64,000 nucleotides of DNA from Phallusia mammillata (Eukaryota). The stretch covers positions 9,796,001 to 9,860,000 of the forward strand of contig OZ281496.1 of assembly GCA_965637545.1 (NCBI GenBank). The letters run 5' to 3'. A model generated the notes under the pieces. It did no database searches. It saw only the letters and a program-made list of their open reading frames with translations, and was not told the origin of the DNA. The first letter of the stretch is position 1. Every line of letters begins with the position of its first letter. Made by a program: the position numbers and the translations under genes. This document shows positions 2,812 to 46,874 of the stretch, one piece after another.

Positions 2812-3029
2812 AGGCCACGGTTAAAACAATTTACCACTGGTTGATTTTGCACAGGAATGCAATAGAACAATCAACGAGAAAAACGTGGAAAATCATTTAA
2901 AGAATTCAAACATTTTCCAGCAACTGAAACAGTAAAGACACGAAGATAAATATGTACATGGTTCACAAGATATTGTCAGTTCGGTATACAAGTCCAATTT
3001 GTCAATCCTATAACATGGTCATGTATCAT

Positions 3030-6000
3030 TTAAAGTGGGGTTTCGTCCACAACTATCACGTTCACTCGTCGGTCGGCTTCTGGCTGTTGACGTGGACGAA
3101 ACTCACGCAAGCGCTCACGAATATAATCATAGAGGATTTTCGGTGCGTTTGAGTAGATGAGAGGATTAAGGGAGCTGTTGATGGGAAGCAGGATTATTGC
3201 CGAAACTGCGTAGATCACTGGAGGTACAGTTGTTCCACCAAAGTTCAAGAAAGCCATGATCGAAATTGGAATCCAGCAGAAGAAATCGGTGAAGATCAGT
3301 CGGATGATTTTCTTTTGCATTTCTGGCAAACGCAAAATAGTTTTACTACTTTGCATTCATACACAAACACATCTCATTAGGTTTACCTTGGCTTTGTTTT
3401 TCTGCTCTTGGGTTTCTCACGCCCTCATTCACTTTCCTGCCACTGGATGTTGACTTTTTGTAAATCCAACTGTACGTCACTGCCACAAATAGAAAAGCCA
3501 AGAAGTTGAGTAAGATGATACCAAGTGAATATGCCCAAGCCTTATCGGTTGGCTTCACATAAAGTTTGCTGATGCAAACGCTGTTGGTGCTGTAGTATCT
3601 ACGAAACATATTGAGGGGGTAAAACGCTCAATACTTTACAACCCATCAGTTTTGCAACCACATACCCGAAATATCCTGCAATGTCAAACATTTCAGTGTA
3701 GTCATAATCTTTGAGAACATCCACAAAATCCGTCCAGGAATAAGCATTTTCTAGCTTCACAATTGCAGTTTCATACTGCTGGGAATCGTTAAGAGTGAAA
3801 TTGTGTTGAAAACCTACAAACTGCTCCATGAAATTCTCCATGCCTACACAAAATGTAACATTTTAATCTAAATCAATAAATAACTATGATTTGAATGGAT
3901 GTACAAAATCTTACTTGAATAGTCCACTGCAGCACTTTGGAAAAACGGGTTTTCCTTCATCCACGCTTTGGTTTCAAACAAATGTTGGAATTCAGATGTG
4001 AGAGGAATAAATGCCAGAGTGAATGAAATTGACCACGACAATAGAATGGTAAGGATGACAACTTTAAGCTTTGGGTGTAGAGATGCGTTGAAAGGCTGCA
4101 AAATATCTTTCATTGTTTGACAAAGCATGGATCTGCATATACAGAACTGAATTACTTACGTATTTTACAGCATAGAGTCGAAATGATGTCAGCAGAACCA
4201 TTGTAAATACTGAGGTTTCGCTGGAAAGCAAAACCAATATTCCCATTGTAGTGCAACTTCCACTTGACCTCCAAACAAGGTCATTGGCGCAGTATTTTCC
4301 AGAGTAGTTAACACCAGCTGCGCCCAGCATGATCAGATAAACTCCCATGAGCAGGTCAGAAACAGAAAGATTGAGGACAAGAAGATGGTTGGTGCGAAAT
4401 GCAGCTGTTTGTGATTCTGTTGTCATCAGGGTTTTTGCTTCCGTAACCATGACGACCTGTGATGTAATTGCAAAGCTCAAACGTGATACTTTATGTGTTA
4501 TTGTCATTTGCATTACATGCGGTATAAGTAAAACAAGTCTAAACATACCAAATTTCCAAAGATTGCAAGAAAGCCCATGATCCACACAACAGCTCGTAAA
4601 AATGGATTAGCGATCAGCTCGTATCGCGAGGAGAAAATGTTCTCATCTGTTCTTGTCGATTTTGATGGACATTCGTCACTCCAGTCAGAACAATCTCCAA
4701 ATCCGTTGAACTTCTGTTGGTTTGCAACACTATTATGATGAAAACTGAAATTACCCAGTAGTCATTGCATGTAGTAATACTTTTTCCTTTTTAACAAAGA
4801 GTGGTTGTTTGTTTTCGCAGTAGAACCTTCCGTCACTCGTGCAGTTTTTTTCGTCACTTTGATCATCGCAATTTATAGTGAAATCACAAATCTCTGCGTT
4901 GCTAATGGAAACCTGAAAACAAAGAGTTATGTTGCAATCAAAAATCATTAACTTGTAAAAATACCTACCTTAGCTCCATTTAACGCTGAGCAATAGAATC
5001 TATCCTGTTTTGTGCAATTTTTAGTTTGTTCGTCACTCTTGTCTTTGCAGTGGACAATGCCGTCACAAACTTTTGAAAGAAATTGATCTGGAATTTCGGA
5101 AGCAGTTTCGTCACTTCCGTCTTGACATTGCATGAAGCCATCGCAAACTTGAGATTGAGGGATGTTTGGAAGCCCATCAGTCGTGAGACAATGTTTGCGA
5201 TGTTTGCAAAGACGAGGATCCTCATCGTATTCAAACCATCGATCTTCGTAGCAAACACGAATTGGACAATCTATTTTCCCGTCGCACAACAGTTTGGTGT
5301 TTCGATATTGTTCCTTTCAACCGAATCATGCAAAACAATTTTGTCTCCAAAAAAAGCACAGACTTGTTACCTTACATATGTTGTGACAAACAAGCTGATA
5401 TAAACAGCTGCCCTCAATTTTACTTTAATTTACCCCACGCAATGTAAACATAAAAGACGTATTTTTCAAAAAATGTCGGTTCTTGATTGAGAAGAGTGTG
5501 GAGTCTCAAAACTGCAGCCCGAACAGGAAAATTCGTTGAAATTAAACTCAAAACATATCAAAAATTATAACAACGAAGGTAGAATTACTATAGTTATGTG
5601 GCCAATTGTGTGATGTTGTGTTTGAATTAAGTTGGAGAAATTACCCAGTTATCGGCACACCCGTTTCACTAAAATGGAAAAAGCTCGGCACGACTTACAA
5701 CTTTGTCGTGATCCGAAATTATATTGTTTTAAATGACCAATAATAAAATGTATATAAATATGGCATACTAAGTTAAATCGCAAATTATCATACTAAACCT
5801 TCGTCAGCAAAACGATTAATTAAAATATTAAAAAATCTATCTAATAAGTAAACAAAACGTTTAATGAAGTTTAGCAATACAGTGTATGGCAAGTATAAAC
5901 GGTGGTGCTTATCGAACAACATAAAGATAAAAACCAATCGCAAATCAACATTTAAGTGATAAGGAGATTTTCTTGTCGCGCTAGTTTCTTACCATCGTAA

Positions 6001-9000
6001 CAGTGTGGAATACAAAACCCTTGTCACCAGTGTAAAATCTAGTTTGCTTGGTTTAAATATTTAGTACGAAATCAGTGCGCCTCAGCAATTATTAAACCAT
6101 AAACAAAATTTTAAGATTGATCTTTATCAGATTGGGACAAATTAATCAATTTTTCATTTGCCAATTTTCTATCAGCATCGTGAATTTTATTATTTTGTAG
6201 CCATGATAACATTTGTTTACGGCGGGATTGAAACTCTAAAGCATAAACCGTGAAAATGTGTTATTTTTGTGCGATTATTTACATTGCGTGGCGAGTACCA
6301 ACTAACTTGTCTCACCACATTTATTCACTGTCGCATTAAAGCGGATAGATTCCAATCCACGGCCGAGAATAAGTTGAAATACGAAAAAAACTTTTTTTCT
6401 GCCGTTGTCAACTATTTTGTTCATATTACTGCTTTTTTACGTTTTTTTATTGCTAAACATTCAGTACCAGAATTATGTCCTCAAAAAGGCAGCAAAAATG
6501 TTTAGACAACTTTATTTCTTTTTGTAACTTACATCCAACCATGCTCCTATATAACTACTAATTCTAAAACAATTATGTACTGCATTCAAGTGGATAGATT
6601 AGCATCAAGATTCAGAGCATAAAACATATAACACAACTTAAATGCTTACCCCACGCCCGTACCAACAATACCAACTGCCTTTAAGAATGGTGTCGGTTGG
6701 GGTTGAGTTTGAGCAATCGGCCTCCACACTCTCATTACCACTAAACATATTCACATTATTTGCCACAAAACCACTTACTATGTCCACATATTAAACCAGT
6801 GGCTTTCAACCTTCAACCATGTCGCGACACATTTTAGCAACCAAATGTAACTTGTGACTCACTTTCAAAGGTTTTCATATTTATTTAATAATCACTAGAA
6901 CAAACTCTCACATTGTGCAAAAAGAATGGGTCTGATCAGCTTGCTGGTCCGTTCGGTTTAAAATATCTTGTTACAACACACTGACACACAACATCTACTA
7001 TAAGTGTTTTGGTGTTTTGACATTCGTTTGCCCACGAGGTGCTGTGGCATTTGCGTTGAATTATCTACTGTATAAAGATGCAAGTTGCGTAATAAAGGTA
7101 TTGCTTTGCATGGCGCGGTCATAATGGAAAAAAATGGGTTGAAATCAAGTGGTTTGACTGTTTTATTGCTTTTATATGTTTTCAACATGTTATTGCTGAT
7201 AAATATTTGATGTTAATCAAAAGGTCCCGCGACCCCCAGTAAAACGGCAAACGACGCCCACGGGATTCGCGGTCTGCGGGTTGAAACCACTGTATTAAAC
7301 AAACGTATTCAAAAAATGACCATTTGCGACCTTAAAAACTGTGTACACACGTACATTGAAAACTTTCCACAATTCTTAACTTCAGTCGTTTCGCAAAGAC
7401 ACTCATCGCTCTTATCCGGACAGTCGATGACGTCATCACACACACTTGACCTTGAAATAGTCGTGGGGTCGTTTATGCACTGGAAGCACAAACTGTGATT
7501 GAAGGTGACAGAAGGCAAACTGCGAATATCTCTGCAAAAGAAGAAAACAGTTGAAAATTCTGGTTGAATAGCTTAGTGTTACTATCATTTGAACTTACCT
7601 GGGATTTTCTGTTAGTTTTTCGTCAACCGATGAAAAGCAGAAATCAGCTGAATCGTCGCAATCCTGGATGGTATCATACAACAACTGCTGAGGCAACGTA
7701 CACGTTTTACCGTTTCTGACACACTTGAAGCCGTGTCCGTTTGCTCGGGGCAACGAAGGGCAGTTGTTACATGGATCGCCATCACACACTGATGAACGCT
7801 TCCAGCAAACCGATTCCGAACACCAAAAGTGGGAGGGGCAGAGATTCTCACAGGGGGAATTTCCATCACATGGTGCAAGTGCATCGCATACGTCACTTTT
7901 TGTCAAAGCACAGGAAGTGTTGGTTGGATCCAGTATATTGTGACAAACTCCATCAATGTCGAAACATTCACATCTAAACAAATCGTATCTTTCCTACAGG
8001 AGTTTTCTAACAACAAATAAACAAACCTACCTCTTATAGTTTGATAGAAGTTTGAGGTTTTTACACATTTCTGGAACTTTTTCATCACAACTACATTCAT
8101 CGCTCATATCAGGACAATCTTGGATGCCATTACACACACTTGATCTTGCAATGATCATTGAGTCATTTTCACATTGAAAGCACAATTGATTGTTGAATGT
8201 GCCCAACGAAGATTGCCGAAAGTCTCTACAAACGCAGTAATAGTTATACATTTTGACAAATGACCAATATATATTTGAGAGATGTTTGCTTATGAATTTG
8301 CTGTACTTGTGCAGATAAATGTGATGGGCAATTTGCTTCAAGAAATTTCAGCTTGAAAACCAATGAATCTGCGTCTGTATTTTATTGGTTTTACGAAAAC
8401 AAATGCATTTCGCTTTTAGAAGCAAAATCAGTGTCAATATAAAAACGGGATAACAGCAATAAATCAAGCAAAAACAATTCAAAAATGTACATACGCACAG
8501 GCCAACCGCAAGAAACGCACAAGTTAAGCATCCGGCACGATGACCGGTTGCCCCTTGTGAGTTGAGGGTAACAGCCAACGAAGTCAACAGATTTTAAGGC
8601 GGATCTAGTCCGGCTTTAGAAGTTTTGTCGGCTCCCCGGTATCAGAAGTTGGCTCTAGAACGAAAATCCACTCATCCTTCCTCTGTGCACACTTCCTTGC
8701 CTCCCTTTCCCTCCCGCCGCTGCCCGTTGGGCCCTTGTCAGTGCCACTAATGCTTGGAGATTTTTCGAGAATTGACTGCACCCCCCTTTTTACCCACCTT
8801 CCGCGCGTGCTTACACCACAAAGGGAAGTCATCTACCTTTCCCCAACCGGCAACCGCGCCCTAGTGGTAGATGGTCCGGTCCTCCTTCCTCCTATCTGTG
8901 CGTCCTTAAGACGTACGGAAACCCCTCCCCCCACAACCGTCCCTAGTTGGCTCAAACCTGGCCCTTTCAGGACCCCTGCCCGGTAGAACTAAACAGTCTG

Positions 9001-12000
9001 GACCCTACGCTCCTGGAGCATACATCTGCTGCATTTGTTTATTTACCGATAAAGGACAGTTTCTACGTGGTATATCACAAACTGAGATCCTTGCAAGCAC
9101 TGACTAATTTGCATAAATTGACGACAATGGTCAATTTCGACAACATACGTTATAGGTCGAGACCATTTCGACCATGACGTCAGCAAAAGGCTGAGTTCCC
9201 ACGGCGTGCAACAAAGTTGTCCACCAAGGTCTCCTGGGGGGTTCCTGCCTTCAGTAGGTAGACAGAGGTTTTGGCTAAGTTGTCAACCAAGAAATCGAGG
9301 CATTTTATTTATGAAATGCTTGGTGAAATCAATTTTCCTATCCGCAACTTGGAGGGAATTGTCGAACGACACGGGGGTCTAGCAGAGTTTACATGCAGAA
9401 CCCGCGAGAGCTTGCAGAGAAGCTGAAGAGGTCGATTTCGCCCGTTTGCACGATCTCAAAAGGACGGCAGTTTTGGTCACAGAAATACCGTTGTGTTTCT
9501 CCGTTGATGAGGATAGCGGGTACCTCGCCTCTAGACATGCCACTGTCAAAAAGGCAGAAACAGTAAAAACCGTTGCGGGACCAAGATGGAAAACGAGGTT
9601 TTGACCTCAAGACGGCCGAGTTGAGAGAAAACTCAATAGGCTCGAGAATACGAATCGAGGGATTCTCATTTTACGTGTGGTATGAAGGACAACCCCACTG
9701 TGTTTTGTATGCAGAAAATTCGGGCACATGCGGGACACTTGTGAAGTATTCTATAGCCGCGACGAAAATTTTCGACACTAGGAGACAATCGTGCACGGAG
9801 AGGCGGGCCTCAAATGAACTCCACTCCCATTCAGAATCCGAAGGATACGATTCCTCCTTCAAATGCCCCAGATGTTGCTGCGAGCAGTGCCCCTCTAGCT
9901 AATGTTGCCATAGAGGGTCCTGTCGCCCTCCAAGATGGCGACACAGACGCTGAAGAAAATAATGAGGGTGTTTTGGAGGCCGCCAACTTCGCCGAAGAGA
10001 ATCAGAATCTCGGGGCCGTGTCTCGGACGCCCCGTTGAAGATGACGGAAAGATGGAGACCTTCGCCCCCGCAGACCAACAACCGAATTGTGAAGGCCGCG
10101 TCTCTGACGCCTCCGCCAAAGACAACATGTATCCTGAAGGCCGCGTCTCGGGCGCCCCCGCTAAAGTCAACATGCATCCTGGAGGCAGCGTTTCGGACGC
10201 CCCCGCCAAAGACGGACTACCAAAAAGCAGCGGAATAGAAATGCCCAAGAAGAAGAACCCTTGGGACGGCCTACTATTGGGAGATCCTGCACTGATTCAC
10301 GAACTAAAATTACTGACTAATTCTACCCAAATAAGCACAAATAGCAAAGAGGAGGAAGAAGAAACGTTCATAAAACGCATGCACTCCTCCTCCGGCTCCT
10401 CAACATCGAGCGCGCACTCCAGCAAACAGCGATCCAATCAAATAGCGCTTGTTTTGTAATTGTTTACTTTTGTTTTCGTTATATATAGGCGCCTACGTCT
10501 GTTCTGTCTCGTATGCCTCTGAATGACCGATTTATCGACCAATCATACAGGACCTTTTATTTATTTTTGATTTGCACCATATGCGCTCTCCAACTTATAA
10601 GTTTATCCATATGCCATATCTCTGAATTGACGCTACGCGATCCAATCAAATAGGGCTTGTTTTGTAATTGTGTGCCTTTTGTTTTTGTTATATACGTACC
10701 TACGCGTGTTCTGCCTCGTATGCCTGTTAACATGTTGTATGTATTGCAATGTAGGCGCTATTCAGTGCGTTTTTTGGTCCGTATTGCGTGCTTTTTGTAT
10801 ATTTTTTCGAAGTATGCGCTCTTGTGCACGTTCTTTCTGGGAAGCCTCTGATTGGCCGTTTCGTGGACCAATCACACAGTGCTTCTCGTTTCTTCAGTGT
10901 TTACATCTTTAGCGCCCTTTCGTTTTTGTTTTCTGTGTTGGTTGGAAATGTTTTTGTTCGTTAACTTCTTATGTTTTGTTTGTTTACATCCGTATCAACC
11001 CTTTATAGTACTTGTTTTGTTTATATATTATGTATAGTGTGCGACATATGCGCGCCAATAAAAGATTTAGGCGCCCATCAAATTTAGCCATTTATTTTCA
11101 AAAAACATTCAACTATTCAGTGCGATGTTGCTCTATAAAACCACATTGTAACACTGTGAAATACCTAACTTTTTGCAAGTCGGAAATGATTACCGTGGTA
11201 ATGCTGATGAAGGACCCTACACTTATGTCAGACGTCCGCGAACAGCTCGATGTAGACTCCATCGGATTAAAAACTAATTTTTGTTTGACTGACTGACATA
11301 TTGTTTTTTCCAAACACGTGGCAACGTATATGCCGTAGATTCGACGTATATACTGTAGCTTCCTTTCGGAAGGAACGTTTTGCTCCCAAACTTCCAAAAG
11401 CAGACACCGGAACGAAAACGAATTGTTTGGGCTACTTCCTTCACCAACATTTTGCAACCAACTGACAGGGAAAGGCAATTGAAGTCATCGGCGTGTATTG
11501 CGTACAAGCGACCTTTCACTATCGGCGTGTGTACTGTACAAGCGACCTTTCACCATCGGCGCTGCCTTAATGCGATACCACAAATTAGCGCACGACACAG
11601 AAAATTGCGAAACAGGATCTTATATTGTGGCAACCACGCCAAAGCCAACCGAATGGTTTTTCCGGTGACTGACTTGCGATCGCAACCAAGATTTTTTCAC
11701 CTACGTCAGCGACTTACGTTTTGAAAATACCGCATACATTGTCACGTGTTTGGAATGTGAAGAGCAATATGTCAGTCAAACAAAAATTAGTTTTTAACCC
11801 GATGGACCTTACATCGAGCTGTTAGCGGACGTCTGACATAAGTGTAGGGGGCTTTCTTCAGCATTTGCGCAGTAAACATTTCCATTTTTTTCAAAAAGTT
11901 ACATATTCCACAGTGTTACAATCAGACTGGTTGGATGTTTGTGAAAATAAATGGCGTAATTTGATGGCGCCACAATCCATATTCAGGCGATGGTCCTTCC

Positions 12001-14380
12001 GGCAATTCCTTCCGCTTAGTTTTTCCTACCGCGTTTGCTTTTATCGTTTTCGTCCTTATGACCTTGAATTGCACAGTTGCTTCACGTCAAAGGAAATTTC
12101 ATTAAGGTGAAAAGAGTTACTGCACAATTTACTTGTTATAGGAAATATGCGCTTAAGTAATTGTGGCGTGTATAGGATTTACACCAAATTATAACAATGG
12201 TAAAACTCTGATTCGTATTTGTCTGTTCAAGCCAACCGTAAAATTTGCAATCAAACGATATAAGCATCTCGTATATATTTTTATCGAAATTTATGTGGTA
12301 AAAATGGTTAAACAAACATATTCCGTTTTTGACGCTTTATATTGTATTAATTCGCTCAGCTGTTGACTTAAGTATATATGGTTATCACTTTAACAAATCG
12401 AATCGCTTGACGCTTCCTCGTATAGACAGTATGTTATTCGAAAGCGATACTAAACAAAACAAAAATACAACACAATTGACCTTACCTGGCATCTCCATTT
12501 TCGGGAGTGAAACATAAATCAGAGCCATTGTCGCAATCTTTTACTCCGTCCCACAAGAACATTTGCGGGAGTGAGCACATTCGGTTGTTTTTGACACATT
12601 TGAAGCCGTATCCGTTATTCCAGTGTTGAAACGCAGGACAGTCATTGCAGGGATCGCCATCACACACAGTCGAACGCTTCCAACAAGTTGAATTCGGACA
12701 TCGGAAATGCGAGGGACATCCGCCGTCACAAAGTGTTTTATTCCGACATGGAATGTCACCCTTGCAATATTCTAGTCTTCGTAGTGCGCACACATCACTC
12801 TTACTGTTAAGCGTGTTGTCGCAACTGTAAAGAGAAATATTATGATTTAATGCAAGAAATATCCAACATTTCAATACGATGATTAACCAAGTCAGTTACA
12901 TTGATGTGTATGAATATGAACATTTCATACAAATATAATCCTCCTTGTTCACTTGAAATATAACTGTTGTGCAGGATTGGTGTTTCATGAGTTATCGCAG
13001 CTTTTTAGAGTAGTGATTTGAAACACATGGTGTGAAGATAATGATCCGATTAACAAACAAAGTTTAGTTTTCTAATGTCATTCAAAACTATCCTTGTTGG
13101 TTTACTTTCCATGTTATCGACGCGCTTGCAAATTTGTATTGAGTAAAACTCAAAGTTTATAGATAACAATAGATTTAAACATAATTGAAATTATAAATAT
13201 AAAATGAAGCTTTTGTTGTTATGTCACTCCTATTTTTAAAACAAAACAGGAAAATATAACGTCTACCTGATGTAGGTTGATGTTAAGTTTTCAGGGTAGG
13301 TTGAAAATGTGACTTGTTTCTCATCACTTCTGTCATAGCACTCAGGGTCGCTATCGCAAAACCACTGAGCATACATATTTCTCCGACCATCTTCACATTC
13401 GAAACCTGCAACAAACACAAAATTAGTTGCGGATTGTTGACGTTGTGTTACATCACAGTGATAATCAACGTACTTTGAACCAGTCACCAAATTTCTAGCA
13501 AAAAATGTGCAAATGTCGCCATTAAGTAAGCATTTGATTTACTAATTTCAAATTCCATGTTAACTGTTAAAACTGTTTTCATGTAAAATGTCAGCACGTT
13601 GAAAAGAAACAGTTATATTTGTTGTAAAGTAAATAAATCGTGTGCGTGTCAAGGAAAATACACTGACATCATACCCCACGAGTGTCGATAATTTGCTTAA
13701 CACTCTAGGTGGCACAAAGAGCACTTGCGTCTATTTAAAATATATTTCTTTAAAGATACTGAAGTTTAGGGCTGTTTGTTTTGTGATAGGGTTTTGTGCT
13801 AAAGAGTTAAAATCAAATGCAATTTCTTTTTTCATTTTTAACCTAAAACCTACTAAATTTGTATCTAACACTACCTGTTTTACAACTATTTTAATAATTC
13901 AGCTCTTTGCGCTACCTATCGGTATTTAGTAAAATTTCGGCTGATGTGAGTTCTGTTGTGGCGAAGCTGTTTGGCGGACTGTGGCAACTGTATAAACAAC
14001 ACTTATATAATAGCATCTACAATAGCATGAGCAATATACATAATGTTTTCCACGGTATTATATGAAGTATTACCACAATATTTACTTAGTATATGCGCAT
14101 TAATCCATACACAATGCAAGTTTTGAAATACGCAATTTGAGAGACTTACAAAAGCTGGACACTAGTGTCCAACAAAGCGTACACAATTTACTCGCAGCTA
14201 CACGATTCGTTTTGTTCACTTTATCATGATGTTGGGCAATTTTGTTACGAATGAAAATTGAATTAAACTGATTAATTAAAAGCCATTCTGCAGAACACGT
14301 TGATTTTATGTAAACTTACTCGGAAAGCAGCAAGTAGGTGGTGCAAAAAACAATATGAAGATTGCAACAACAAACATCAT
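3030..14380 (-). CDS. LDLa-repeat, LRR-less rhodopsin-class GPCR (RXFP/GRL101-related), copy 1; 15 coding exons, ~1059 aa
   Basis: Hand-spliced exons (GT-AG, all phases compatible): 14380-14320, 13405-13267, 12824-12486, 8225-8031, 7973-7599, 7531-7355, 6740-6650, 5313-4969, 4912-4781, 4713-4549, 4456-4160, 4095-3915, 3843-3666, 3598-3387, 3322-3030. Total 3180 nt = 1060 codons, no internal stop. It shows a signal-like MMFVVAIFILFFAPP, multiple CDG..DC.D.SDE LDLa motifs, hinge/TM1 SSRYELIANPFLRAVVWIMGFLAIFGNL, TM2 LNLSVSDLLMGVY, ECL2 YYSTNSVC, TM6 FTDFFCWIP and TM7 LLPINSSLNPLIY. The 7TM exons are secure. The first exon and the 6650-to-5313 join (weak acceptor) are less certain. Confidence 0.85.
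6797..7292. mobile_element. Non-autonomous hAT MITE (496 bp) in intron 6 of copy 1
   Basis: TIRs cagtggctttcaacc / gggttgaaaccactg, with a perfect 8-bp TSD tattaaac (6789-6796 and 7293-7300). The paralogous intron of copy 2 (~41780) has the single empty site. Confidence 0.9.
8340..9170 (-). mobile_element. Degenerate Tx1/L1-type LINE ORF1 (gag-like) relic
   Basis: The minus strand reads ..ETVLYR*INKCSRCMLQERRVQ.. (decayed V.Y.G..CX2CX4HX4C knuckle at ~9033-8992). A G/S/K-rich low-complexity tail and a T-rich 3' region follow. It is GC-richer than the host intron, and no ORF2 is seen. Confidence 0.45.
10091..10213 (+). repeat. 45-bp tandem repeat (~2.7 copies) inside the ORF1 relic
   Basis: g(a/g)aggc(c/a)gcgt starts at 10091, 10136 and 10181, encoding PEGRVS(D/G)A(S/P)AK(D/V)NM repeats. 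Confidence 0.85.
10429..10720. repeat. Direct duplication with 208-bp offset in the 3' region of the ORF1 relic
   Basis: gcgatccaatcaaatag(c/g)gcttgttttgtaattgt occurs at 10429 and 10637. Confidence 0.75.
11070..11971. mobile_element. Inverted pair of Penelope-like element 3' fragments (GIY-YIG endonuclease relics)
   Basis: Arms ~11070-11340 and ~11723-11971 are reverse complements. The right arm reads ENTAYIVTCLECEEQYVSQT (11723-11782) then TRWTLHRA after a frameshift. The left arm reads the same motifs on - (ESTAY..QYVSQ, IRWSLHRA, LHQHYHGNH). These match the PLE consensus VVY.I.C..C...YVGQT....R..EHR. Confidence 0.7.
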
Positions 14381-14514
14381 GAAGAGATTTCTAAACAAAT
14401 AAACAAGCATTACTCAACGTTGTGAACAATGTATCTGTTCACTAGTCACTCAAATCACAGATTTCCATAACATGACTTCATAATGCTGTTTAATGTTCAA
14501 TGTAGGTCACTTAC

Positions 14515-14585
14515 CTTTCTGTAGACAGTGATGTTATTTTTGTTGATGTTTCAGATATATTAATCAACACGCAATGTTACCTAAA
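14515..14585 (-). other. Candidate non-coding 5' UTR exon of copy 1
   Basis: Bounded by ttttgagcag| and AG|GTAAGT. Both splice sites are conserved in copy 2 (~44351-44419, GTGAGT), but the frames contain stops. It would splice to the acceptor at 14390 just ahead of the ATG. Confidence 0.35.
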
Positions 14586-16037
14586 CTGCTCAAAAGAACA
14601 CATAATTAAGTAAAACTCTGTTTGATGAAAGCAGTTAAAAAGTCAATTTATGTCTCGTTACGGATATTTTTAATGTATTTGACACTTCTGCAACTCAACA
14701 AGTGTGACATATGTTTACCGGTTGTTGTTGAAACAAACAATTGCAAAGTTCTGAATTTCTTTAAATTACGTATAAATGCTTCATTATCCTACAACCGGTG
14801 ATGTTCAAATTTTCGGTAATTTCACCTACATGTCAATTCGTACATCCTATACATAACCATTCACGTTCCTAAGCTTAGATTCGCGACTGCTTACGCTGAA
14901 TACATGCGACACTGTGGTTGTTGTAACGGTGATGCCATTGCAACAAGCATTGGGTGGTTTGGTTTTATTGCGAATGGGCGAGACATTTTTCAATTGGGCA
15001 AACACATGTGAAAAATTTCCTGTTAATGTGGATTATTTTTTGTCTGTTGGTGTTTCATCTGTTTCTTGAATTGGTAAACTATACCGGGTACTCGTTAAAA
15101 ATATAATTGGAATCATGTAACAGTCACGATAAATATACATTTTTTCTATTATTATAGATCTTCACACTTTTGGCATCAAGAAACCTTTATGGAAATCGAA
15201 TAACTCCTCAGGAACTGACACACAACGGCTTAAAACTGTATTTATTTTCAACCGGTGATGTTTAAATGTACGGAAATTTCGTCCACATATGAGTTTATCT
15301 GACCTGCACGCTTCCAAAGCGACATAAACATGCGTTTATGCTCGCTAGTTGAGTAAACAAGGTACAAACCATTAAACCGAATTTGTTAAAGCAATGCTGC
15401 TGCTGCAGAGCGATATACTGAAACGTGTATAACTGAGTTGAAGTTTTGGATAAGAAAAGTAAATTAACACAACTAAATAGCGCACATTTATCAAGACTTA
15501 TATTTCTTGCAATAAGTCATCCGCATCAAATACAATTTAGCCAAAATTGTATTTTTTTCGTCACACACTTCTCCGGTAGTAGATAATACGATTTCCGCGA
15601 TTATATGACTACCAAAATGTTTTCAAATTCTCAAATTTTCTTAAAAAAAGAAATTTGTTGCAACAACAAGTAAGTGTGCTTAGCTTACATTAAAATGGTA
15701 AAATATGCTCCACGTAACCTCTCGTTGATTACAGATCTATGTAAAAAGTTTAAAGTAGCCTATACAGTTGATTACAAGTTGTTTATAGACATTCACTCTT
15801 GCCACGGTTATCCTATTGAAGTCTGGTAAATTTTATGTGCAATCAAGCCACATATTACATAGGATTCCAATCACTTGTTTGGGAAGTCGTCCGGGTATTC
15901 GCATACTAATTTGAAATATTGGTTGTGTGATAAGCTTGTTTTTTGTGTGATTTTAACCAATCATTAGCCTGATCATTAACCTTGGTTTTTATTCTAAACT
16001 TGCACAAATTTTATGTAATTAACGTCCCGTACTATTT

Positions 16038-37745: not shown

Positions 37746-38285
37746 CGGGTGTTTGAAGCATGTTTAAGTGACACGACGTGAGTAATGTTTACTAAACATA
37801 GCACGTCAGGCCGATCCTAAGCACAAAGATGGCGGTCGTGTTTCACTGCGCTATGCTGCACATGTATCTTGACACTGAAAGATGCTGTGAACCCCAGTTT
37901 GATTCCATATAATGATTCGCTTGACAAATCCAACAGCCTGAACACGAAACCTGCAAACTGACAAACCTATTCACACTTTAACTCAAAAACGTATTTTCAC
38001 TTTATTAAAGGCCACGGTTCAAATAATTTATCACAGGTTCATTTTGCACAAAAATGCAAGAGAACAAAGAACAAGAAAAACGTGGAAAATCATCTTAAAA
38101 ATCGAATTAAAACATTTTCCAGGAAGTGAAACAGTAAACACATGAAGATAAATATGTACATTGCTCACAAGATATTGTCAGTTCGGTATACAAGTCCGAT
38201 TTGTCATTCCTACCACATGGTCATGTATCATTTAAAGTGGGATTTCGTCCACTACTATCACGTTCTCTCGACTGTCGGCTTCTGG

Positions 38286-41200
38286 CTATTGACATGGACG
38301 AAACTCACGCAAACGGTCCCGAATATGATCATACAGCATTTTCGGTGCGTTAGAGTAGATGAGAGGATTAAGGGAGCTGTTGATGGGAAGCAGGATTATT
38401 GCCGAAACTGCGTAGATCACTGGAGGAACAGTTGTTCCACCGAAGTTCAAGAAAGCCATAATCGAAATTGGAATCCAGCAGAAGAAATCAGTGAAGATCA
38501 GTCGTATGATTTTCTTTTGCATTTCTGTAAAATACAAAACAATTTTACTGTGTTGCTTTTATACACAAACACATCTTATTGCGTTCACCTTGGTTTTGTT
38601 TTTCCGGTATTGGGTTTCTCACCCTCTCATTCACTTTCCCGCCAATGGACGTTGACTTTTTGTAAATCCAAATGTACGTCACTGCCACAAATAAAAAAGC
38701 CAAGAAGTTGAATATGATGATACCAAGTGAATATGCCCAAGCCTTGTCTGTTGGTTTCACGTAAAGTTTGCTGATGCAAACGCTGTTGGTACTGTAGTAT
38801 CTAGGAAACATATTAAGGTATTAAAACACTCAATATTTTATAACCATTACTACTTGCAGCAACATACCCGAAATATCCTGCAATGTCAAACATTTCAGTG
38901 TAGTTATAATCTTTGAGAACATCCTCAAAATCCGTCCAGGAATAAGCATTTTCTAGTTTTGCAAGTGCAGTTTCATACTGCTGGGAATCGTTGAGAGTAA
39001 AATTGTGTTGAAAATCTACAAACTGCGCAATGAAATTCTCCATGCCTGCACAAAATAAAACATTTTCAATCGAACCAATCAATAACTATGATTTGAATAA
39101 ATGTACAAAATCTTACTTGAAAAGTCCACTGCAGCACTTTGGAAAAACGGGTTTTCCTTCATCCACGCTTTGGTTTCAAACAAATGTTGGAATTGGGATG
39201 TGAGAGGAATAAATGCCAGAGTGAATGAAATTGACCACGACAATAGAATGGCAAGGATGACAACTTTAAGCTTCGGGTCTAGAGATGCGTTGAAAGGCTA
39301 AAAAAAATGTTTATTGTTTGACAAAGCAAGGATCTGCATGTACACCACTAAAGTACTCACGTATTTTACAGCATAGAGTCGAAATGATGTCAATAGAACC
39401 ATTGTAAATACTGATGTTTCGCTGGAAAGCAAAACCAATATTCCCATTGCAGTGCAACTTCCACTTGACCTCCAAACAAGATCATTGGCGCAGTATTTTC
39501 CAGAGTAGTGAACACCAGCTGCGCCCAGCATGAACAGATAAACTCCCATGAGCAAGTCAGAAAAAGAAAGATTGAGGACAAGAAGATGGTTGGTGCGAAA
39601 TACTACTCTTTGTGATTCTGTTGTCATCAAAGTTTTTGCTTCCGTAACCATGACGACCTGTGATATAATTGCAAATTTAAACGTAATACTTCTTGTGTTA
39701 TTATTATTTTTCATTCAATGGGGTATAAGTAGAACAAGTCTAAACATACCAAATTTCCATAAATTGCAAGAAAGCCCATGATCCACACAACAGCTCGTAA
39801 CAGTGGATTAGCGATCAGCTCGTAACGCGAGGAGAAAATGTTCTCATCTGTTCTAGTCGACTTTGATGGACATTCGTCGCTCCAGTCAGAACAATCTCCA
39901 AATCCATTGAATTTCTGTTGGTTTGCAACATTTTTTAAGTTTGAAACTCGTATGACCCAGTAGTCATTAAATGTAGTAATACTTTTTCCTTTTTGACAAA
40001 AAGTGGCTGTTTGCTTTCGCAATAGAACCTTCCGTCATTCGTACAGTTTTTTTCGTCACTTCCATCATCGCAGTTTATAGTGAAATCACAAACCTCTGCG
40101 TTGCTAATGGAAACCTGAAAAAAAAAATTATGTTGCAACAAAAATCATAACCTTGTAAAACAGCATACCCTAGCTCCATTTAACGCTGAGCAATAGAATC
40201 TGTCCTGCTTTGTACAATTTCTGGGTTGTTCGTCACTCTTGTCTTTGCAGTGGACAAAACCGTCGCAAACTTTTGAAAGATAATTTTTTGGAATATCGGA
40301 TACAGTTTCGTCACTTCCATCTTGACAGTGGATGACGCCATCGCAAACTTGAGCTTGAAGGATGTGAAAAAGTCCATTAGGTGTTGGGCAATACTTAAAA
40401 CCTTTGCAAAGACGGGGATCCTCATCGTGATTGAAGTCTCGACCACCGTAGTTAACACCAGATGAACAATCTCTTTTCCCGTCGCACAACAGTTCGGTGT
40501 TTGGATACCATCCCTTCCGATCAAAACATGCAAAACAATTTGGTCAATGAAATCAGCACAGACTTGTTTTCTTACTTATGTTGTGACAAACAAGCTTGTA
40601 CAAACAGTGACTATGAGTTTTACTATGATTTGACGCGAACAATGGAAGCATAAAAGATATATTTATTATAAAATGTCGGTTCTTCATCGAGAGGAGTACG
40701 TAGTTAAAATGCGGTAAATTCGTTAAAACAAAACACGAATGAGTATTAAAAATTATAACAACAAAGGTAAAGTTACTACAGCCATGTGGCCTAGTGTGAT
40801 GTCGTGGTCGAATTAAGTTGGGGAAGACACCCAGTTGTCGGCACACCCGTTTCAATAAAATGAAAAAAGCTCGGCTCGACTTTATTATGAAACTAAAACT
40901 TCATCAAAAGCAACGAAACGAAAAATTAAAACTTTTAAAACTCAGTCTAATAAGTAAACAAAATGTTTAATAAAGTTGTAGCAATTTAAGTGTGAGATTT
41001 AAAACCCTAGTCACCAGTGTAAAATCTAGATTGCTTGTTTAAATATTTGGTACGAAATCAGTGCGTATTAGTAATTTTTAAACCATGAACAACATTTTTT
41101 GAGATTAATCTTTATCAGATTGGGACAAATTAATCAATTTTACATTTGCAAATTTTCTACCAGCATCGTAAATTTTATTATCTTGTAGCAATGTCAACAT

Positions 41201-44200
41201 TTGTTTGTGGCGAGATTGAAACTCTGAAGCATCAACCGTGACAGTTATGTATTGTTTAGTGCGATTATTTACATTGCGTGGCGAGTACCAACTAAATTGT
41301 CCCACTCATTATGTTTGTCTGTCGCAATAAAGCAGATAGATTTGAATCCACGGCCCAGAATAAGTTTAAAAACGAAAACAATACTTTTTCTTCGGTCGTT
41401 AACTATTTTGTTTATGTTACTGTTTTTTTCGTTTTTCATTGCTAAATATCCAATACCAGGATTATGTCTACAAAAAAGGGAGAAAACTGTTTAGACCACT
41501 TTATTTCGTTTTATAACATCCACGCATGCTTCTACATAACCACTGATTCTACTACATAACCACTGATTCATCATGTACTGCATTCAAGTGGATAGATTAG
41601 CATCTACAATCAGAGCATAAAACAATGTAACACAACTTATATACATACGGTTCCAAAACAAGTCCATCTGCCTTTAAGAATGGTGTCGGTTGTTGTTGAG
41701 TTTGAGCAATCGGCCTCCACACTCTCATTACCACTAAACATATTCACATTATTTACCAAAACAATCTACTTTGTTCACGTATTAAACAAAGGTATTCAAA
41801 GAAAGTTCATGATTTGCGACTTAAAAAAACTGTGTTCACACGTACATTGACAACTTTCCACAATTCTTCACTTGGGTCGTTTCACAAAGACACTCATCAC
41901 TCTTATCAGGACAATCAATGACGTCATCACACACACTTGACCTTGAAATTATCATGTGGTCGTTTATGCACTGGAAGCACAAACTGTGATTAAAGGTGAC
42001 AGACGGGAAACCGCGAATATCTCTGCAAAAGAAAGGAAACAGTTAAAAATCCTGTTTGAATCACTTGGTTTTGCTATTATTTAAAGATACCTGGAATCTT
42101 CATTTAGTTTCTCATCAACCGATGTAAAGCAGAAATCAGCTGAATCGTCGCAATCCTGGATTGTATCAAACAACAACTGCTGAGGTAACGTACACGTTTT
42201 GCCGTTTCGGACACACTTGAAGCCGTGTCCGTTTGCTCGGTGCAGCGAAGGGCAGTTGTTACATGGATCGCCATCACACACAGTCGAACGCTTCCAACAA
42301 ATTGAATTCGGACATGGGAAGAGGGAGGGACATATGCCGTCACAAAGAGTTTTATTCCGACATGGAATGTCACCCTTGCAGTATTCTAGTCTTCGTAGTG
42401 CGCACACTTTACTCACACTGTTAAGCGTGTTGTCGCAGCTGTAAATATTAAATATTATGAATTTGATGTGACAAATGTCCAATTATTGAATATGATTACT
42501 AACAAAATCCTTAACATTAATAAAAAATATTTTTTAACATTGAATACAAATATAATCCTTTTTATTCACTTCAAACATAACTATTGTGCAGGACTGGTGT
42601 TCAAGGAATCAAAGAGGCTTTTTAGAGTAGTGGTTTGAAACATATGATGTGAAGATAATGAACAGATTGGGTTATAATTAACACACGAAGTTTAGTTTTC
42701 TAATATCATTCAAAACTGTCCTTGTTGGTATACTTTCCATGTTATCGACTCACTTGTAAATTGTATTGAGCAAAAACTCAAAATTTGAAGACAATCAATA
42801 GATTTCAAAATGATTGACATTATAAATATGAAACAAAACTTTTGTTGTTTCGTCACTTAAATTTTTTTAATGCAAAACAAAAAAATGTAATGTATACCTG
42901 ATGTAGGTTGATGTTAAGTTTTCAGGGTAGGTGGAAAATTTGACTTCTTTCTCATCACTTCCGTCATGGCAGTCCTGATTTCCATTACAAAAACCCCAGG
43001 AACTTAAAGTTTGTTGACCATCTTCGCATTTGAACCCTGTAACAAACGCAAACATGATCATGAATTGTTGACGTTGTATTACAAACTACCATCACAGTGA
43101 CAACCAGTTTTCTTATTTTTTGTAAAAAGATAAAAGAAATGTGCAAATGTTGTTAGTAAGTAAGCATTTGATTGACTAGTTTAAAATTCTATGTAAACTG
43201 GTAAAAATGTTTTCATATAAAATGTCAGCACGTTGCGAAGAAACAGCTATGTTGTTGTAAAGTAAATAAATCGAGTGCGTGACAAGACGTCATACCACAC
43301 GAGAGCAGATAGTTTGCTTAACACTATAGGTGGCACAAAGAGCACTTGAGTCTATTTAATAATATATTTCTGTTAAAATACTGAAGGTTAGGTCTATTTG
43401 GTTTAAGATAGGGTTTTGTTTCAAACAATTGTAAGAACTTGTAAAAAACAATTGAATTTTTTTATCTTAAAACCTACTAAATTAGTTTCTAACACTAAAC
43501 CTGTTTTTTTCTTTTTTCTGAATGGTCTCGCGCGCCTGACCCACATACAGTCATAAAAAACCTTGATCGGGATTCGTCCCCGGGAGCGTCCTGATTTTTA
43601 CAGAAACCAGAAACCTGTTTTTTTTTTCACGGGGTTCAAACCCAGGACACTCCCGGGGACGAATCCCGATGAAGGTTTTTTATGAATGTAGATGTGGCAG
43701 GCGCGCTAGACCATTCGGTCAATTTGACATCTGTTTTTATACTTCAGCTCTTTGCACTACCTATCGGTATTAGGCAAATTTTCGACTGACGTGAATTCTG
43801 GTGGCAAAGGTGTTTGGCCGACTGCGGTAACTGTATAAACAACACTTATATAGGATATAGCATCTATATAGCATAAAGAATACAATAACATAATATTTTC
43901 CATGGTGTTATAAAAAACATTATCACCATAATTACTTAGTATATGCACATTGATCCATACACAAGTCAATTTTTAAAATACGGATTTTGAGAGACTTGCA
44001 AATGGCTGGACACTAAGGGCAAACAAAGCAATTAAACACACGTGGCCAAAGAAAACGATACGATACGTTTTGTTTTACTTTATCATTTTGAAAAATTGAT
44101 TAAACTGATCAATTAAAAGTTATTGTCCAAAATATGTTGATTTTATGCAAACTTACTCTGAGAGTATGTAGGTGGTGCAAAAAACAATATGAAGATTGCA

Positions 44201-44214
44201 ACAACAAACATCAT
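38286..44214 (-). CDS. LDLa-repeat GPCR, copy 2; 13 coding exons, ~851 aa, C-terminally shortened
   Basis: Exons: 44214-44157, 43036-42898, 42438-42091, 42022-41846, 41733-41649, 40513-40169, 40114-39983, 39914-39750, 39657-39361, 39297-39117, 39045-38868, 38800-38589, 38524-38286. Total 2556 nt = 852 codons. Most exon lengths are identical to copy 1. A TAG at 38286-38288 precedes the ancestral TAA at 38232-38234. Confidence 0.83.
43520..43716. mobile_element. Foldback MITE with ~70-bp terminal inverted repeats in intron 1 of copy 2
   Basis: gaatggtctcgcgcgcctg..atcgggattcgtcccgggag pairs with ctcccggggacgaatcccgat..caggcgcgctagaccattc. It is absent from the paralogous intron of copy 1 (~13880). 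A possible ctgttttt duplication lies at 43501 and 43731. Confidence 0.8.
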
Positions 44215-46874
44215 GAAGAGATTTCTAAACAAATAAACAAACATTAGCCCACGTTGTGAACAATGTATCTGTTCACTAGTCACTTATATCACAGATTTAC
44301 AGGAATAACATGACTACATCATGCTGTCATCATGTTCAATAAGTCACTCACCTTCCTGTTGGCAGTGCTGTTATTCTTGTTGATGTTTCAGTTACAAATC
44401 ACCACACAATGTTTCCTAAACTGCTCAAAATAACAGATTATTAATTAATTAATTTAAACACAGTTTGTTGAAAATAGTTAAATTGTCAATTTATGTCGAG
44501 TTACGGATATTTTTAGTGTACTATTTGTCATTTCTAATCAGTTCGTTAGTGCTATAAACAAATCAGTTCGTTAGTGGGCTTTTCCAACTTTGTGGATTGA
44601 CTTATATTAGTTTAATTGTTTCGAAAACCGTTTACATTCCTAAGATTATTTTTGCGACTGCTTTTGCAGAATGTGTGTGACACTGTGGTTGTTGCAGCGG
44701 AGAGATCATTGCAACAAGTTTGGGTGGTTCGGTTGTTTAGGAATAACCAAGACATTTTTCAATGTGACAAAGCCATATGCGAGGCTTAGGTTCGTAGGTC
44801 AGTTTTTTGGAATCTTCACAAGATGCCAATACGCAGTGGATAATTTGTTTTGAAGTTGGCATAAATTGCTAGTTGAGTTAACGGGAAACAAACCAGAAAA
44901 TTGAATCTGTAAAAGCAATATTACTACAGCAACAGAACGACATACACCTGAGTTTTTTTTAAAACTGGGTTAAAGTTTAGGATCAGATAGTAGCAAAGAG
45001 CAGTGCCGGATTGAAGGTCTGCTGGCCTGTAGGCACATTTTATAAGTGGCCCGAAAATCATGGTTGCCAACAAAACAATTAGAATTATCAGTGTTGCCAA
45101 ACCATTTTTTTCCTCACACAAGTATTATACAAGAAGACCTCGGCGATGATATTACATCAAGGTCTTTTCAAATTCTTAAATATTCCCTATGATTGGAGCA
45201 AAATGATTTTTTTAATAACAAAAAGTGGGTTAGCTCACATGAAAATGTTATATACATACTACACATTATTGAGGACAGTAAGTCATATAACCTTGGCAAA
45301 CTCTCCATCAACACTCGTCAATTGCAGACAATGTCTTTAAGTTTACAGTAACGCAAATATTTACTACACGTTATTATTGAACATTTAATATGAAACTTTT
45401 GTGTGCAATCAACATCCCTCAAAATTACTATTAAAATACCAAGCGTTAATTGGATGACTCGGGTAATTGCAAAGCAGTTATCAACCGTGAATCGTCAAAA
45501 ATCGCAGGGAGGAAAATCACTTAGATACTTAACTACACTAGGTTCGTGAACGCGTAGTCTATAACTTGTTGGGAAAGTCGTCAGATTATTTGCAAAATCG
45601 AGTTAATCGCATAGTTATGTTTAAATATGGGTTGTGCGATAAACTGGATTCGTCTGTGTTTTTGTACTGTCAGCTTTTTATTTTCGATTGCGCCGTGACA
45701 TGTTTACTGATAACCAATTGTAAACTGCAAGCCCTGTGGACGTCGTCATAGCCTTATTTTCGCCTTTTCTGCTTGTTCTAATTACTTTCCATAAACCTAA
45801 TGTCATTTACTATGAATAGATTTGATTTTTACATTTCGACAAGACAACACAAAAATACAGCTAGTCTTAAGGGCGTTTAAAAAAATTCTTACAGACATTT
45901 TTGAAACAAACAAACACATAAATATCGACATTTGTAATCAGTTTAAATAAGATTTTTAAATAGCTGACAAATCGTCGAAAAACTGCACTTTCATATTTCA
46001 CTACGCTATCGATCCTAATTCTTTCATCAAAAACGAACAATGATTGACGTCAAATGACTCATATAGCCAGGATGCAAATCCTAAAAGCCAATCGAAGTTA
46101 GCTATAGGACAGCATGTGATACTGCAGCCCAAAAACGGCAGTGAAAAGCAGAACAAACTTTTTTATATTGCAGCAAACGGCTACTCAATTTATCGAATAA
46201 TCTGTGTGGCTTATTACCATATTTTGAGTTCCTATGAACTAGTTTTAATTTATGTGCTACATAAAATACATAAAACATATGTATAAAAAAAAAATATAAG
46301 TTATCTATGTCGCCGAAATTGTTTGTTGTCCTTAAAAATATTTAACTTAAAGTGTCTAGAGAGAGAAAACATACTAATACAAAAATCAAAACATCACGTT
46401 CATTAGGTATAGTTTAGCTTTGAAATAAGTTTAAAAACGTACGTTTTTAATAATAGCGACTTCGCCACTAATGCAACATCTGTGGTCAAGTTGCTTCTCT
46501 TCAAAATACGTTCGTATGCACGAAAATTTTGGTTGAGGCGATCCGTAAGCAGTTGGGCAAAAATCGTTTTCAAGTTAGCTTAATTCGACTGTTAGTTTTT
46601 AGATTTTATAGAGTAATGAATTTGTGTTCGTCTCATAATGGAGATTTTGATGTATTGTTTGCAGCTGAAAGGGCTCCTGGCGCACTAGACACAGTAGAAT
46701 GAAAACCTAATTTATGCAAGTAGCAGCGGTTCAAATACTTTCTGTTTCTACTCCAAATCTTCATTATATATGACATTACCTCGTCATGTTTACGCTAGAG
46801 GCTTTTACAGTATAATGTTTTGAGCAATTTACCGAAGTTAGTCAATTGAAAACAAAAATCACGGTTGTATAAAA

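What the first reader, a model, noticed from the sequence alone, without database searches (positions are those of the whole stretch)
42091..42438. Chimeric exon: in-frame loss of a whole cassette through a 17-bp identity
Exon 3 of copy 2 begins like copy 1 exon 3 (CDNTLNS..CALRRLEYCKGDIPCRNKTLCDG) and ends like copy 1 exon 5 (CNNCPSL.RANGHGFKCVRNGKTCTLPQQLL). The switch lies in GGATCGCCATCACACAC, identical at 12651-12667, 7773-7789 and 42265-42281. This corresponds to a 4878-bp deletion removing one exon, two half-exons and the TE-filled 4.26-kb intron while keeping the frame. It is direct evidence that ectodomain length and composition are rewritten by recombination between paralogous exons, creating a new hybrid module.
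Basis: seen in the sequence. Interest (0 to 1): 0.72.

Follow-up and report, generated by a model that had tools for sequence, protein, structure and literature searches.

The report
Hybrid receptor exon from in-frame deletion
One of three neighbouring sea-squirt-type receptor genes has lost about 190 codons of its outer domain because two related exons recombined at a short shared stretch, leaving one intact hybrid exon; this is a clean example of a well-known way in which modular genes change.

Summary
The exon at 42091-42438 (minus strand, 348 nt) is a true hybrid. Its first 155 nt are of the family's "E3" type and its last 171 nt are of the "E5" type. The switch lies within 22 bp (42262-42283), which contains the 17-mer found exactly three times in the window.

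At 88 family-wide diagnostic sites the pattern is 39/41 E3-type, then 44/47 E5-type (Fisher p = 7e-21). Trees of the two halves place them in opposite clades, each with 100/100 support. The introns on both sides are collinear with the intron before E3 and the intron after E5.

All 16 other paralogues I fetched keep E3-E4-E5-E6. In a genome-wide census only copy 2 has the two halves abutting. The short form is therefore derived: a homology-guided, in-register deletion that is in frame because all these exons are multiples of three in length (phase 2-2).

The 4878-bp size and the repeat-filled intron describe copy 1, not the event itself, which removed somewhere between about 1.2 and 4.9 kb. The remaining recognised coding exons of copy 2 look intact.

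The gene belongs to the LRR-less LDLa-repeat GPCR family described in Ciona in 2008. Other windows of this genome were noted before in this scan as holding this family. The mechanism is classical, so this is a new instance of a known kind. Read-level proof and expression remain untested.

The parts
42091..42438 (-). Hybrid exon of copy 2 (348 nt, 116 codons, phase 2-2). All 15 cysteines of the module are kept.
42284..42438 (-). E3-type half of the hybrid. It is 92% identical to the first half of copy 1 E3 and lies in the E3 clade with 100/100 support.
42262..42283 (-). Breakpoint interval (22 bp) between the last E3-type and the first E5-type diagnostic site. It codes for part of the CDGD motif and contains the 17-mer at 42265-42281.
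42091..42261 (-). E5-type half of the hybrid. It is 92% identical to the second half of copy 1 E5 and lies in the E5 clade with 100/100 support.
42439..43419 (-). Intron upstream of the hybrid exon, collinear with the E2-E3 intron of copy 1 (12825-13797) and of copy 3.
41776..42090 (-). Short (67 nt) intron plus the E6 LDLa exon downstream of the hybrid, collinear with copy 1 7288-7598. Splice signals are intact.
12486..12824 (-). Copy 1 exon E3 (339 nt), the intact counterpart of the 5' parent. The 17-mer lies at 12651-12667.
8031..8225 (-). Copy 1 exon E4 (LDLa module, 195 nt; an alternative donor at 8066 would make it 159 nt). Copy 2 has no counterpart.
7599..7988 (-). Copy 1 exon E5 (390 nt), the intact counterpart of the 3' parent. 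The 17-mer lies at 7773-7789.
8226..12485 (-). Copy 1 E3-E4 intron (4.26 kb) carrying a repetitive element. The element is shared with copy 3 and two further local paralogues and has 40 or more other genomic matches.
37946..44763 (-). Copy 2 gene as a whole: signal-peptide exon, LDLa exons and 7TM exons. It is collinear with copy 1 (2751-14994) except for the missing segment.

Best explanation
Copy 2 of a tandemly duplicated LDLa-repeat, relaxin/LGR-like 7TM receptor gene once had the family's standard exon series E3-E4-E5. E3 and E5 are old internal duplicates of one cysteine-rich module of about 113 aa. They are about 49% identical in protein, have the same cysteine spacing and the same intron phase.

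In the copy 2 lineage these two exons paired out of register within the same gene. Possible routes are intrachromatid or unequal sister-chromatid exchange, single-strand annealing or microhomology-mediated repair of a break in the intervening DNA, or replication template switching. The exchange resolved inside the best-matching block between them, the 17-22 bp that code for the CDGD motif.

Everything between was lost: the 3' part of E3, the E3-E4 intron, E4, the short E4-E5 intron and the 5' part of E5. That is about 190 codons. The junction is in homologous register and all the exons involved are multiples of 3 nt, so the product is one complete hybrid module in frame, spliced normally to E2 and E6.

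Shown here: the hybrid structure, the breakpoint interval, the collinear flanks, and that the short form is derived and unique. Inferred: the molecular route, and that the shortened receptor is still in use.
For: The 17-mer occurs three times exactly. The three-way alignment switches parent at the 17-mer, including the intron flanks. The self-comparison gives collinear blocks 7288-7809/41776-42301 and 12587-13797/42204-43419. Of 88 diagnostic sites, 39/41 are E3-type and then 44/47 are E5-type, p = 6.8e-21. Maximum-likelihood trees of the halves put the hybrid inside the E3 clade and inside the E5 clade, each 100/100. All 16 other paralogues on four contigs have E3-E4-E5-E6. In the genome census only copy 2 matches over positions 1-348 or has the two halves 22 nt apart; in the 25 or so other E3/E5 pairs that could be matched from the lists the two exons lie at least 0.5 kb apart. 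The CDGD block is the longest exact identity between a gene's own E3 and E5 in 9 of 16 paralogues, at 13-18 nt. Copies 1 and 3 are closer to each other than to copy 2 on both sides of the junction, as expected for one lineage with an internal deletion. All 15 cysteines are kept. The other copy 2 exons have no stops or frameshifts and the splice sites are intact. dN/dS of the hybrid against its relatives is 0.35 and 0.16, typical of the family.
Against: There is no read-level or second-assembly confirmation of the junction. No transcript evidence was found: the protein word search with the exon was blank, which says nothing about longer proteins. The shared identity is only 17-22 nt, short for classical homologous recombination, so the route (NAHR, SSA, MMEJ or template switching) cannot be told apart. 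Trees of the flanking introns are mosaic and poorly resolved because the family undergoes gene conversion, so an exchange between two different gene copies is not excluded. No reciprocal E5/E3 hybrid was found. The last exon of copy 2 has a stop 18 codons earlier than copy 1, so some decay cannot be ruled out.
Confidence: 0.75

Rival explanations
1. A Lepore-type unequal crossover took place between two different neighbouring paralogues. E3 of an upstream gene paired with E5 of the next gene. The exchange deleted the 3' part of one gene, the spacer and the 5' part of the other, so copy 2 is a fusion of two genes rather than one gene with an internal deletion.
For: The genes lie in a same-strand tandem array. 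The family is clearly reticulate: copy 3 and L013 are virtually identical (branch lengths 0.001 and 0) over the first 155 nt of E3 plus 950 nt upstream, yet group differently downstream. Identity between copy 1 and copy 2 is 88% 3' of the junction and 80% 5' of it. In the downstream tree copy 2 groups with dispersed paralogues (98/99), while in the upstream tree it is unresolved.
Against: The drop in identity towards the 5' end is general: copies 1 and 3 go from 90-96% to 84-86%. Copies 1 and 3 are each other's closest relatives, with copy 2 outside, on both sides of the junction. Paralogues 20-30 kb apart that share kilobases at 85-90% identity should pair in register (E3 with E3). An out-of-register join at a 17-22 nt block is more likely between exons 1-5 kb apart in one gene.
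Confidence: 0.15
2. The junction is an assembly artefact: a collapse or misjoin. Copy 2 really has separate E3, E4 and E5 exons.
For: This is a repeat-rich tandem gene family. No reads were available to me, and the hybrid occurs only once in the genome.
Against: E3 and E5 are only about two-thirds identical at the DNA level and share at most 18 nt of exact identity, far too little for a collapse. Both halves of the hybrid differ by 8% or more from every other copy in the genome, so the hybrid is not a patchwork of other loci. No orphan contig carries a copy-2-like E3 3' half, E4 or E5 5' half. The join is exactly in register and in frame, with collinear introns on both sides. The contig is 32 Mb long.
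Confidence: 0.04
3. The short form is ancestral. Copy 2 keeps an unduplicated module, and E3/E4/E5 arose later in the other copies.
For: None found.
Against: The E3/E5 split (about 49% protein identity) is far older than the radiation of the paralogues (85-92% DNA identity). The two halves of the hybrid nest inside opposite clades instead of sitting at their base. The long form occurs on at least eight contigs, including a second subfamily on C5.
Confidence: 0.01
4. The deletion is real, but copy 2 is a decaying gene and the hybrid module has no function.
For: There is a stop 18 codons early in the C-terminal tail. No transcript evidence was obtained. Earlier notes of this scan report gene loss within such clusters (untested here).
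Against: All recognised coding exons are open and their splice sites are intact. All 15 cysteines of the module are kept. dN/dS of 0.16-0.35 equals the family average rather than drifting towards 1.
Confidence: 0.2

Closest known systems
LDLRR-GPCR family of Ciona intestinalis (Kamesh, Aradhyam & Manoj 2008, PMC2396169)
   Same: Both have tandem LDL-receptor class A repeats placed directly on a 7TM core related to relaxin/INSL3 receptors, no leucine-rich repeats detected, a lineage-specific expansion, and a repeat number that varies between members (1-10 in Ciona).
   Different: The paper reports the domain architectures but no event that changes them. Here one such change is caught at nucleotide resolution. 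The E3/E5 module is a degenerate cysteine-rich unit of about 113 aa that scores below Pfam's LDLa cut-off.
Lepore-type hybrid genes and hybrid exons made by unequal homologous recombination (haemoglobin Lepore, glycophorin A/B hybrids, red/green opsin hybrids); from my own knowledge
   Same: The junction is in register between two paralogous sequences, the frame is kept, each side is collinear with one parent, and the breakpoint lies in a shared identity tract.
   Different: Those events join two genes of 90% identity or more over long tracts. Here the partners are most likely two exons of one gene, about two-thirds identical, with only 17-22 nt of shared identity at the junction.
Intragenic unequal crossover in repeat-module receptors (complement receptor CR1 long homologous repeats, apolipoprotein(a) kringle IV, haptoglobin Hp2) and exon deletions in the human LDL receptor gene; from my own knowledge
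   Same: Whole modules are gained or lost in frame because the module exons have symmetric phase, and ectodomain length varies as a result.
   Different: Those breakpoints usually lie in introns or in Alu elements and leave the modules whole. Here the breakpoint lies inside the coding sequence and creates a new hybrid module.
Chimeric adhesion GPCR noted elsewhere in this genome by this scan (s1-408626; compared there with human EMR2)
   Same: It is a receptor ectodomain rebuilt by recombination within a tandem cluster of the same genome.
   Different: It involves a different receptor class and a gene-scale chimera at a duplication junction. I did not test it.

Membership tests
LDLRR-GPCR (LRR-less LDLa-repeat GPCRs of ascidians) | One or more LDL-receptor class A repeats in the N-terminal ectodomain | tested here: met
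   Pfam PF00057 scores above its cut-off in the exons at 4951-5289 (39.8 bits), 8030-8221 (27.1 bits) and 13266-13490 (28.0 bits). E6 and E3 give weaker hits.
LDLRR-GPCR (LRR-less LDLa-repeat GPCRs of ascidians) | Rhodopsin-type 7TM core closest to relaxin/INSL3 and glycoprotein-hormone receptors | tested here: met
   The exon carrying TM2-TM3 matches LHCGR, TSHR, RXFP1, FSHR and LGR4 chains (E 3e-9 to 3e-5). Single exons give weak 7tm_1 hits. An NPLIY motif lies in the last exon.
LDLRR-GPCR (LRR-less LDLa-repeat GPCRs of ascidians) | No leucine-rich repeats between the LDLa repeats and the 7TM core | tested here: inconclusive
   None of the 12 exon translations scanned hits an LRR family, and the last LDLa motif shares an open reading stretch with TM1. 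Not every exon was modelled.
Product of homology-guided unequal recombination (NAHR/SSA-type deletion) | Junction in homologous register between two paralogous segments, each side matching a different parent | tested here: met
Product of homology-guided unequal recombination (NAHR/SSA-type deletion) | Flanks collinear with the outer flanks of the two parents, and the intervening DNA absent | tested here: met
Product of homology-guided unequal recombination (NAHR/SSA-type deletion) | Breakpoint inside a tract of shared identity | tested here: met
   The 22-bp interval contains the 17-mer, which is the longest exact E3/E5 identity in 9 of 16 paralogues.
Product of homology-guided unequal recombination (NAHR/SSA-type deletion) | Undeleted parental allele or reciprocal duplication product observed | tested here: not met
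   No E5-first/E3-second hybrid exon appears among the scored genome hits. This is expected to be absent for SSA or intrachromatid events, and only one haploid assembly was available.
Product of homology-guided unequal recombination (NAHR/SSA-type deletion) | Junction confirmed by spanning reads | not testable with these tools
   No reads are available.

The most novel reading that the evidence does not exclude
The hybrid exon may not be a one-off. Symmetric phase 2-2 module exons, conserved motif-coding blocks and frequent gene conversion could together make in-frame hybridisation and loss of modules a regular source of ectodomain diversity in this large orphan receptor family of 50 or more genes, comparable in spirit to the diversification of recognition receptors. 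Three observations point this way: a second, independent in-frame E3-E4 exon fusion in the paralogue on contig C1 (L015), the mosaic relationships among the copies, and the higher dN/dS of the first half of the module.
Probability: 0.2. Interest if true: 0.55.

Novelty: new member of a known kind. Interest (0 to 1): 0.3.

Why it matters
Exon shuffling and unequal crossover are the textbook explanation for why modular receptors differ in repeat number. Cases where the breakpoint can be placed within about 20 bp inside a coding exon, with the ancestral state fixed by dozens of paralogues, are uncommon outside human disease genes. This one shows how an LDLa-repeat GPCR ectodomain can lose about 190 residues and gain a new hybrid module in one step without breaking the cysteine framework. 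It offers a natural construct for asking which modules of this orphan ascidian family matter for ligand binding. It does not reveal a new mechanism.

Tried and rejected
1. Structure of the hybrid module. AlphaFold2 with the 34-row alignment of E3/E5 modules gave mean pLDDT 41.7. This is unusable, so no fold search was run.

2. Independent evidence for the junction or for expression. The word-based protein search with the exon translation found nothing. It covers only proteins of 63-201 aa, so the blank is uninformative.

3. Trees of 950 nt of flanking intron on each side, to separate an intragenic from an inter-paralogue exchange. They have long branches, indel-rich alignments and mosaic topologies, and are not decisive.

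4. Reciprocal product. I searched the genome with the second half of E3 and the first half of E5 and paired the hits by hand. No E5/E3 hybrid was found. Only 40 of 53-57 candidates were scored.

5. Origin by reverse transcription of a cryptically spliced RNA. Read from the sequence, the GT and AG dinucleotides next to the motif in E3 and E5 would give a junction one base shorter or one base longer than observed. Rejected.

6. Ancestral short form. Rejected.

7. Pfam on the hybrid exon itself gave no family. The module is a degenerate LDLa-like unit.

Every search was exon by exon, by reference. The window is not human; it is an invertebrate chordate-type gene family.

Full report
**What is in the window**

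The window is G000:C3:9796001-9860000 of a 240-Mb eukaryotic assembly. On the minus strand lie three tandem copies of one gene:
- copy 1, about 2700-15000;
- copy 2, about 37900-44800;
- copy 3, which starts near 60700 and runs past the window end.

Each copy has a signal-peptide exon, a series of cysteine-rich LDLa-type exons and several 7TM exons. Pfam finds LDL-receptor class A repeats above threshold in three exons. The TM2-TM3 exon matches LHCGR, TSHR, RXFP1 and LGR4 chains. The last exon carries NPLIY. No LRR family was hit.

This is the architecture of the LDLRR-GPCR family described in Ciona intestinalis, whose members carry 1-10 LDL-A repeats (PMC2396169). Earlier notes of this scan name the genome as the ascidian Phallusia mammillata and had already filed other clusters of this family. 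I did not verify the species name. The sequence is not human.

All protein searches were done exon by exon, by reference. I did not build or search a joined spliced protein.

**The observation**

The 17-mer is present exactly three times, against 0 expected. The copy 2 exon is 42438..42091, 348 nt, with an AG acceptor and a GT donor.

In copy 1 the counterparts are:

| Exon | Coordinates (minus strand) | Length |
|---|---|---|
| E3 | 12824..12486 | 339 nt |
| E4 | 8225..8031 | 195 nt |
| E5 | 7988..7599 | 390 nt |

- E4 may instead end at an alternative donor at 8066, which would make it 159 nt.
- With the 195-nt model the E4-E5 intron is only 42 nt.
- All these introns are phase 2, so all three exons are symmetric and multiples of three.

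In the three-way alignment, copy 2 follows E3 and its upstream intron up to the 17-mer. It then follows E5 and its downstream intron.

**Statistical support from the family**

The genome holds a large family of such genes. With the hybrid exon as query, only the exon itself matches over positions 1-348. Every other hit covers either 1-229/235 (E3 type) or 107-348 (E5 type).

I fetched 16 further paralogues from contigs C1, C3, C7 and C8. All have E3, E4, E5 and E6 in that order.

Across 16 E3 and 17 E5 exons there are 88 positions where the two exon types differ consistently:
- copy 2 is E3-type at 39 of the first 41;
- copy 2 is E5-type at 44 of the last 47;
- the switch lies between exon positions 155 and 178, that is window 42283-42262;
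- Fisher p = 6.8e-21.

The three odd sites are isolated. At least one of them, the His codon in CPSLHR, also occurs in another E5, so they look like ordinary substitutions.

Maximum-likelihood trees of each half separate E3 from E5 with 100/100 support. They place the first half of the hybrid inside the E3 clade and the second half inside the E5 clade.

**Polarity and uniqueness**

The long form is found in every other paralogue examined, including dispersed copies and a second subfamily on C5. The halves of the hybrid nest within the clades rather than at their base. The short form is therefore derived.

A census with each half separately gave 33 E3-first-half hits, all of them scored, and 40 E5-second-half hits. 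Only in copy 2 do the two lie 22 nt apart. In the 25 or so other pairs that could be matched from the lists they lie at least 0.5 kb apart. No reciprocal E5/E3 hybrid was seen among the scored hits.

**What was lost, and how much**

In coding terms the loss is 339 + 195 + 390 - 348 = 576 nt, or 192 codons. With the shorter E4 model it is 180 codons. The lost parts are the second half of E3, the LDLa exon E4 and the first half of E5.

It is not a measurement of the event. The E3-E4 intron is about 0.5 kb in dispersed paralogues, 1.4-1.9 kb in some local ones, and 3.2-4.3 kb in copies 1 and 3, L011 and L013. Those four long-intron copies share a repetitive element that has 40 or more other genomic matches. 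Whether the ancestor of copy 2 carried that element cannot be told. The deletion was therefore between about 1.2 and 4.9 kb.

**Mechanism**

The junction is exactly in homologous register. It falls in the block that is the longest exact identity between a gene's own E3 and E5 in 9 of 16 paralogues, at 13-18 nt. A random deletion would land in register about once in several hundred tries, so homology guided the join.

The tract is short and the exons are only about two-thirds identical. This fits single-strand annealing, microhomology-mediated repair or template switching as well as it fits classical unequal crossover. I cannot separate these routes.

I favour an intragenic event. The partners were 1-5 kb apart. 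Copies 1 and 3 are closer to each other than to copy 2 on both sides of the junction. The lower identity of 5' regions is general to all copy pairs.

A Lepore-type exchange between neighbouring genes remains possible, at about 15%. The family is reticulate: copy 3 and L013 are virtually identical (branch lengths 0.001 and 0) over the first 155 nt of E3 plus 950 nt upstream but not downstream, and the flank trees disagree with each other.

An assembly collapse is very unlikely. The two exons share at most 18 identical bases. The hybrid differs by 8% or more from every other copy. No orphan contig holds the missing parts. Only reads can close this point.

**Consequence for the protein**

E3 and E5 share one cysteine framework of 15 Cys with the same spacing, and the hybrid keeps all of them. 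The breakpoint lies in the CDGD motif of a degenerate LDLa-like sub-module.

Evidence that copy 2 is still in use:
- its other exons align to copy 1 without stops or frameshifts, and the E5-E6-type intron and the E6 splice sites are intact;
- dN/dS of the hybrid against its relatives is 0.35 for the first half and 0.16 for the second, like the family averages of 0.36 and 0.24.

The one blemish is a stop 18 codons earlier than in copy 1 in the cytoplasmic tail. Use of the hybrid module is thus plausible but not shown. The structure prediction failed (pLDDT 41.7), and no transcript-derived protein was found (an uninformative blank).

**Comparison and verdict**

The gene is a member of a known orphan family (PMC2396169). 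The event is a new instance of a known kind: an in-frame hybrid made by out-of-register, homology-guided recombination between repeated modules. From my own knowledge, comparable cases are Lepore-type hybrids, CR1 and apolipoprotein(a) repeat variation, and LDL receptor exon deletions.

Its merit is resolution and a firm polarity, not a new principle. A second independent in-frame exon fusion (E3 to E4) in the paralogue on contig C1 hints that such remodelling recurs in the family. That wider claim needs a full family annotation.

Noticed in passing
L015:1001-1470 (G000:C1:27457683-27458150, + strand): In this dispersed paralogue, E3 runs directly into E4 in one open frame (...FKCVKK-IGCPTFASFNNQLCFQC...). 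The last LDLa-like part of E3, the intron and the start of E4 are missing. This is a second, independent in-frame exon-fusing deletion, and it is not in homologous register.
   Followed up: partly
L001:7236-8341 versus L013:5033-6138 (G000:C3:9867236-9868341 versus C3:9693510-9694615): Copy 3 and a paralogue 170 kb away are virtually identical (branch lengths 0.001 and 0) over the first 155 nt of E3 plus about 950 nt of upstream intron, yet group with different copies downstream of E5. This suggests a very recent gene conversion or patchwork duplication.
   Followed up: partly
window 7989-8030 (minus strand): The best splice model gives an E4-E5 intron of only 42 nt, with two in-frame stops inside it. 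An alternative donor at 8066 would give 78 nt. Needs RNA evidence.
   Followed up: no
window 38235-38555 (minus strand): The last exon of copy 2 has a stop codon 18 codons upstream of the position of the copy 1 stop, which shortens the cytoplasmic tail.
   Followed up: no
window 8600-11100: The G+C-richer insert in the E3-E4 intron of copy 1 is a repeat. It is shared with the same intron of three other local paralogues at 86-93% identity. It also occurs in arrays at C3:10.98-11.30 Mb, C6:13.3-13.8 Mb (densest at 13.6-13.7 Mb) and on small contigs at about 78-80% identity.
   Followed up: partly
window 61319-61341 (+ strand): There is a 2-mismatch copy of the motif, coding STVCDGD on the opposite strand, in the spacer just 3' of copy 3. 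It is probably a relic fragment of a module exon.
   Followed up: no
G000:C3:16239494-16239835 (-) and G000:C3:11663725-11664058 / 11650685-11651055 (-): One E3 exon has no E5 in the expected orientation next to it; it faces a complete plus-strand paralogue. Another E3/E5 pair lies 13 kb apart. These are possible gene fragments or very large introns.
   Followed up: no
G000:C5:0.33-2.8 Mb: A second, denser subfamily of about 20 or more genes has the same E3...E5 arrangement and is about 83-88% identical to the C3 copies. The family has at least 50 members.
   Followed up: no
alignment A2 (E3 modules): Among paralogues the first half of E3 evolves much faster (dN/dS 0.36, dN 0.156) than its second half (dN/dS 0.08). 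The variable part is the one kept in the hybrid.
   Followed up: partly
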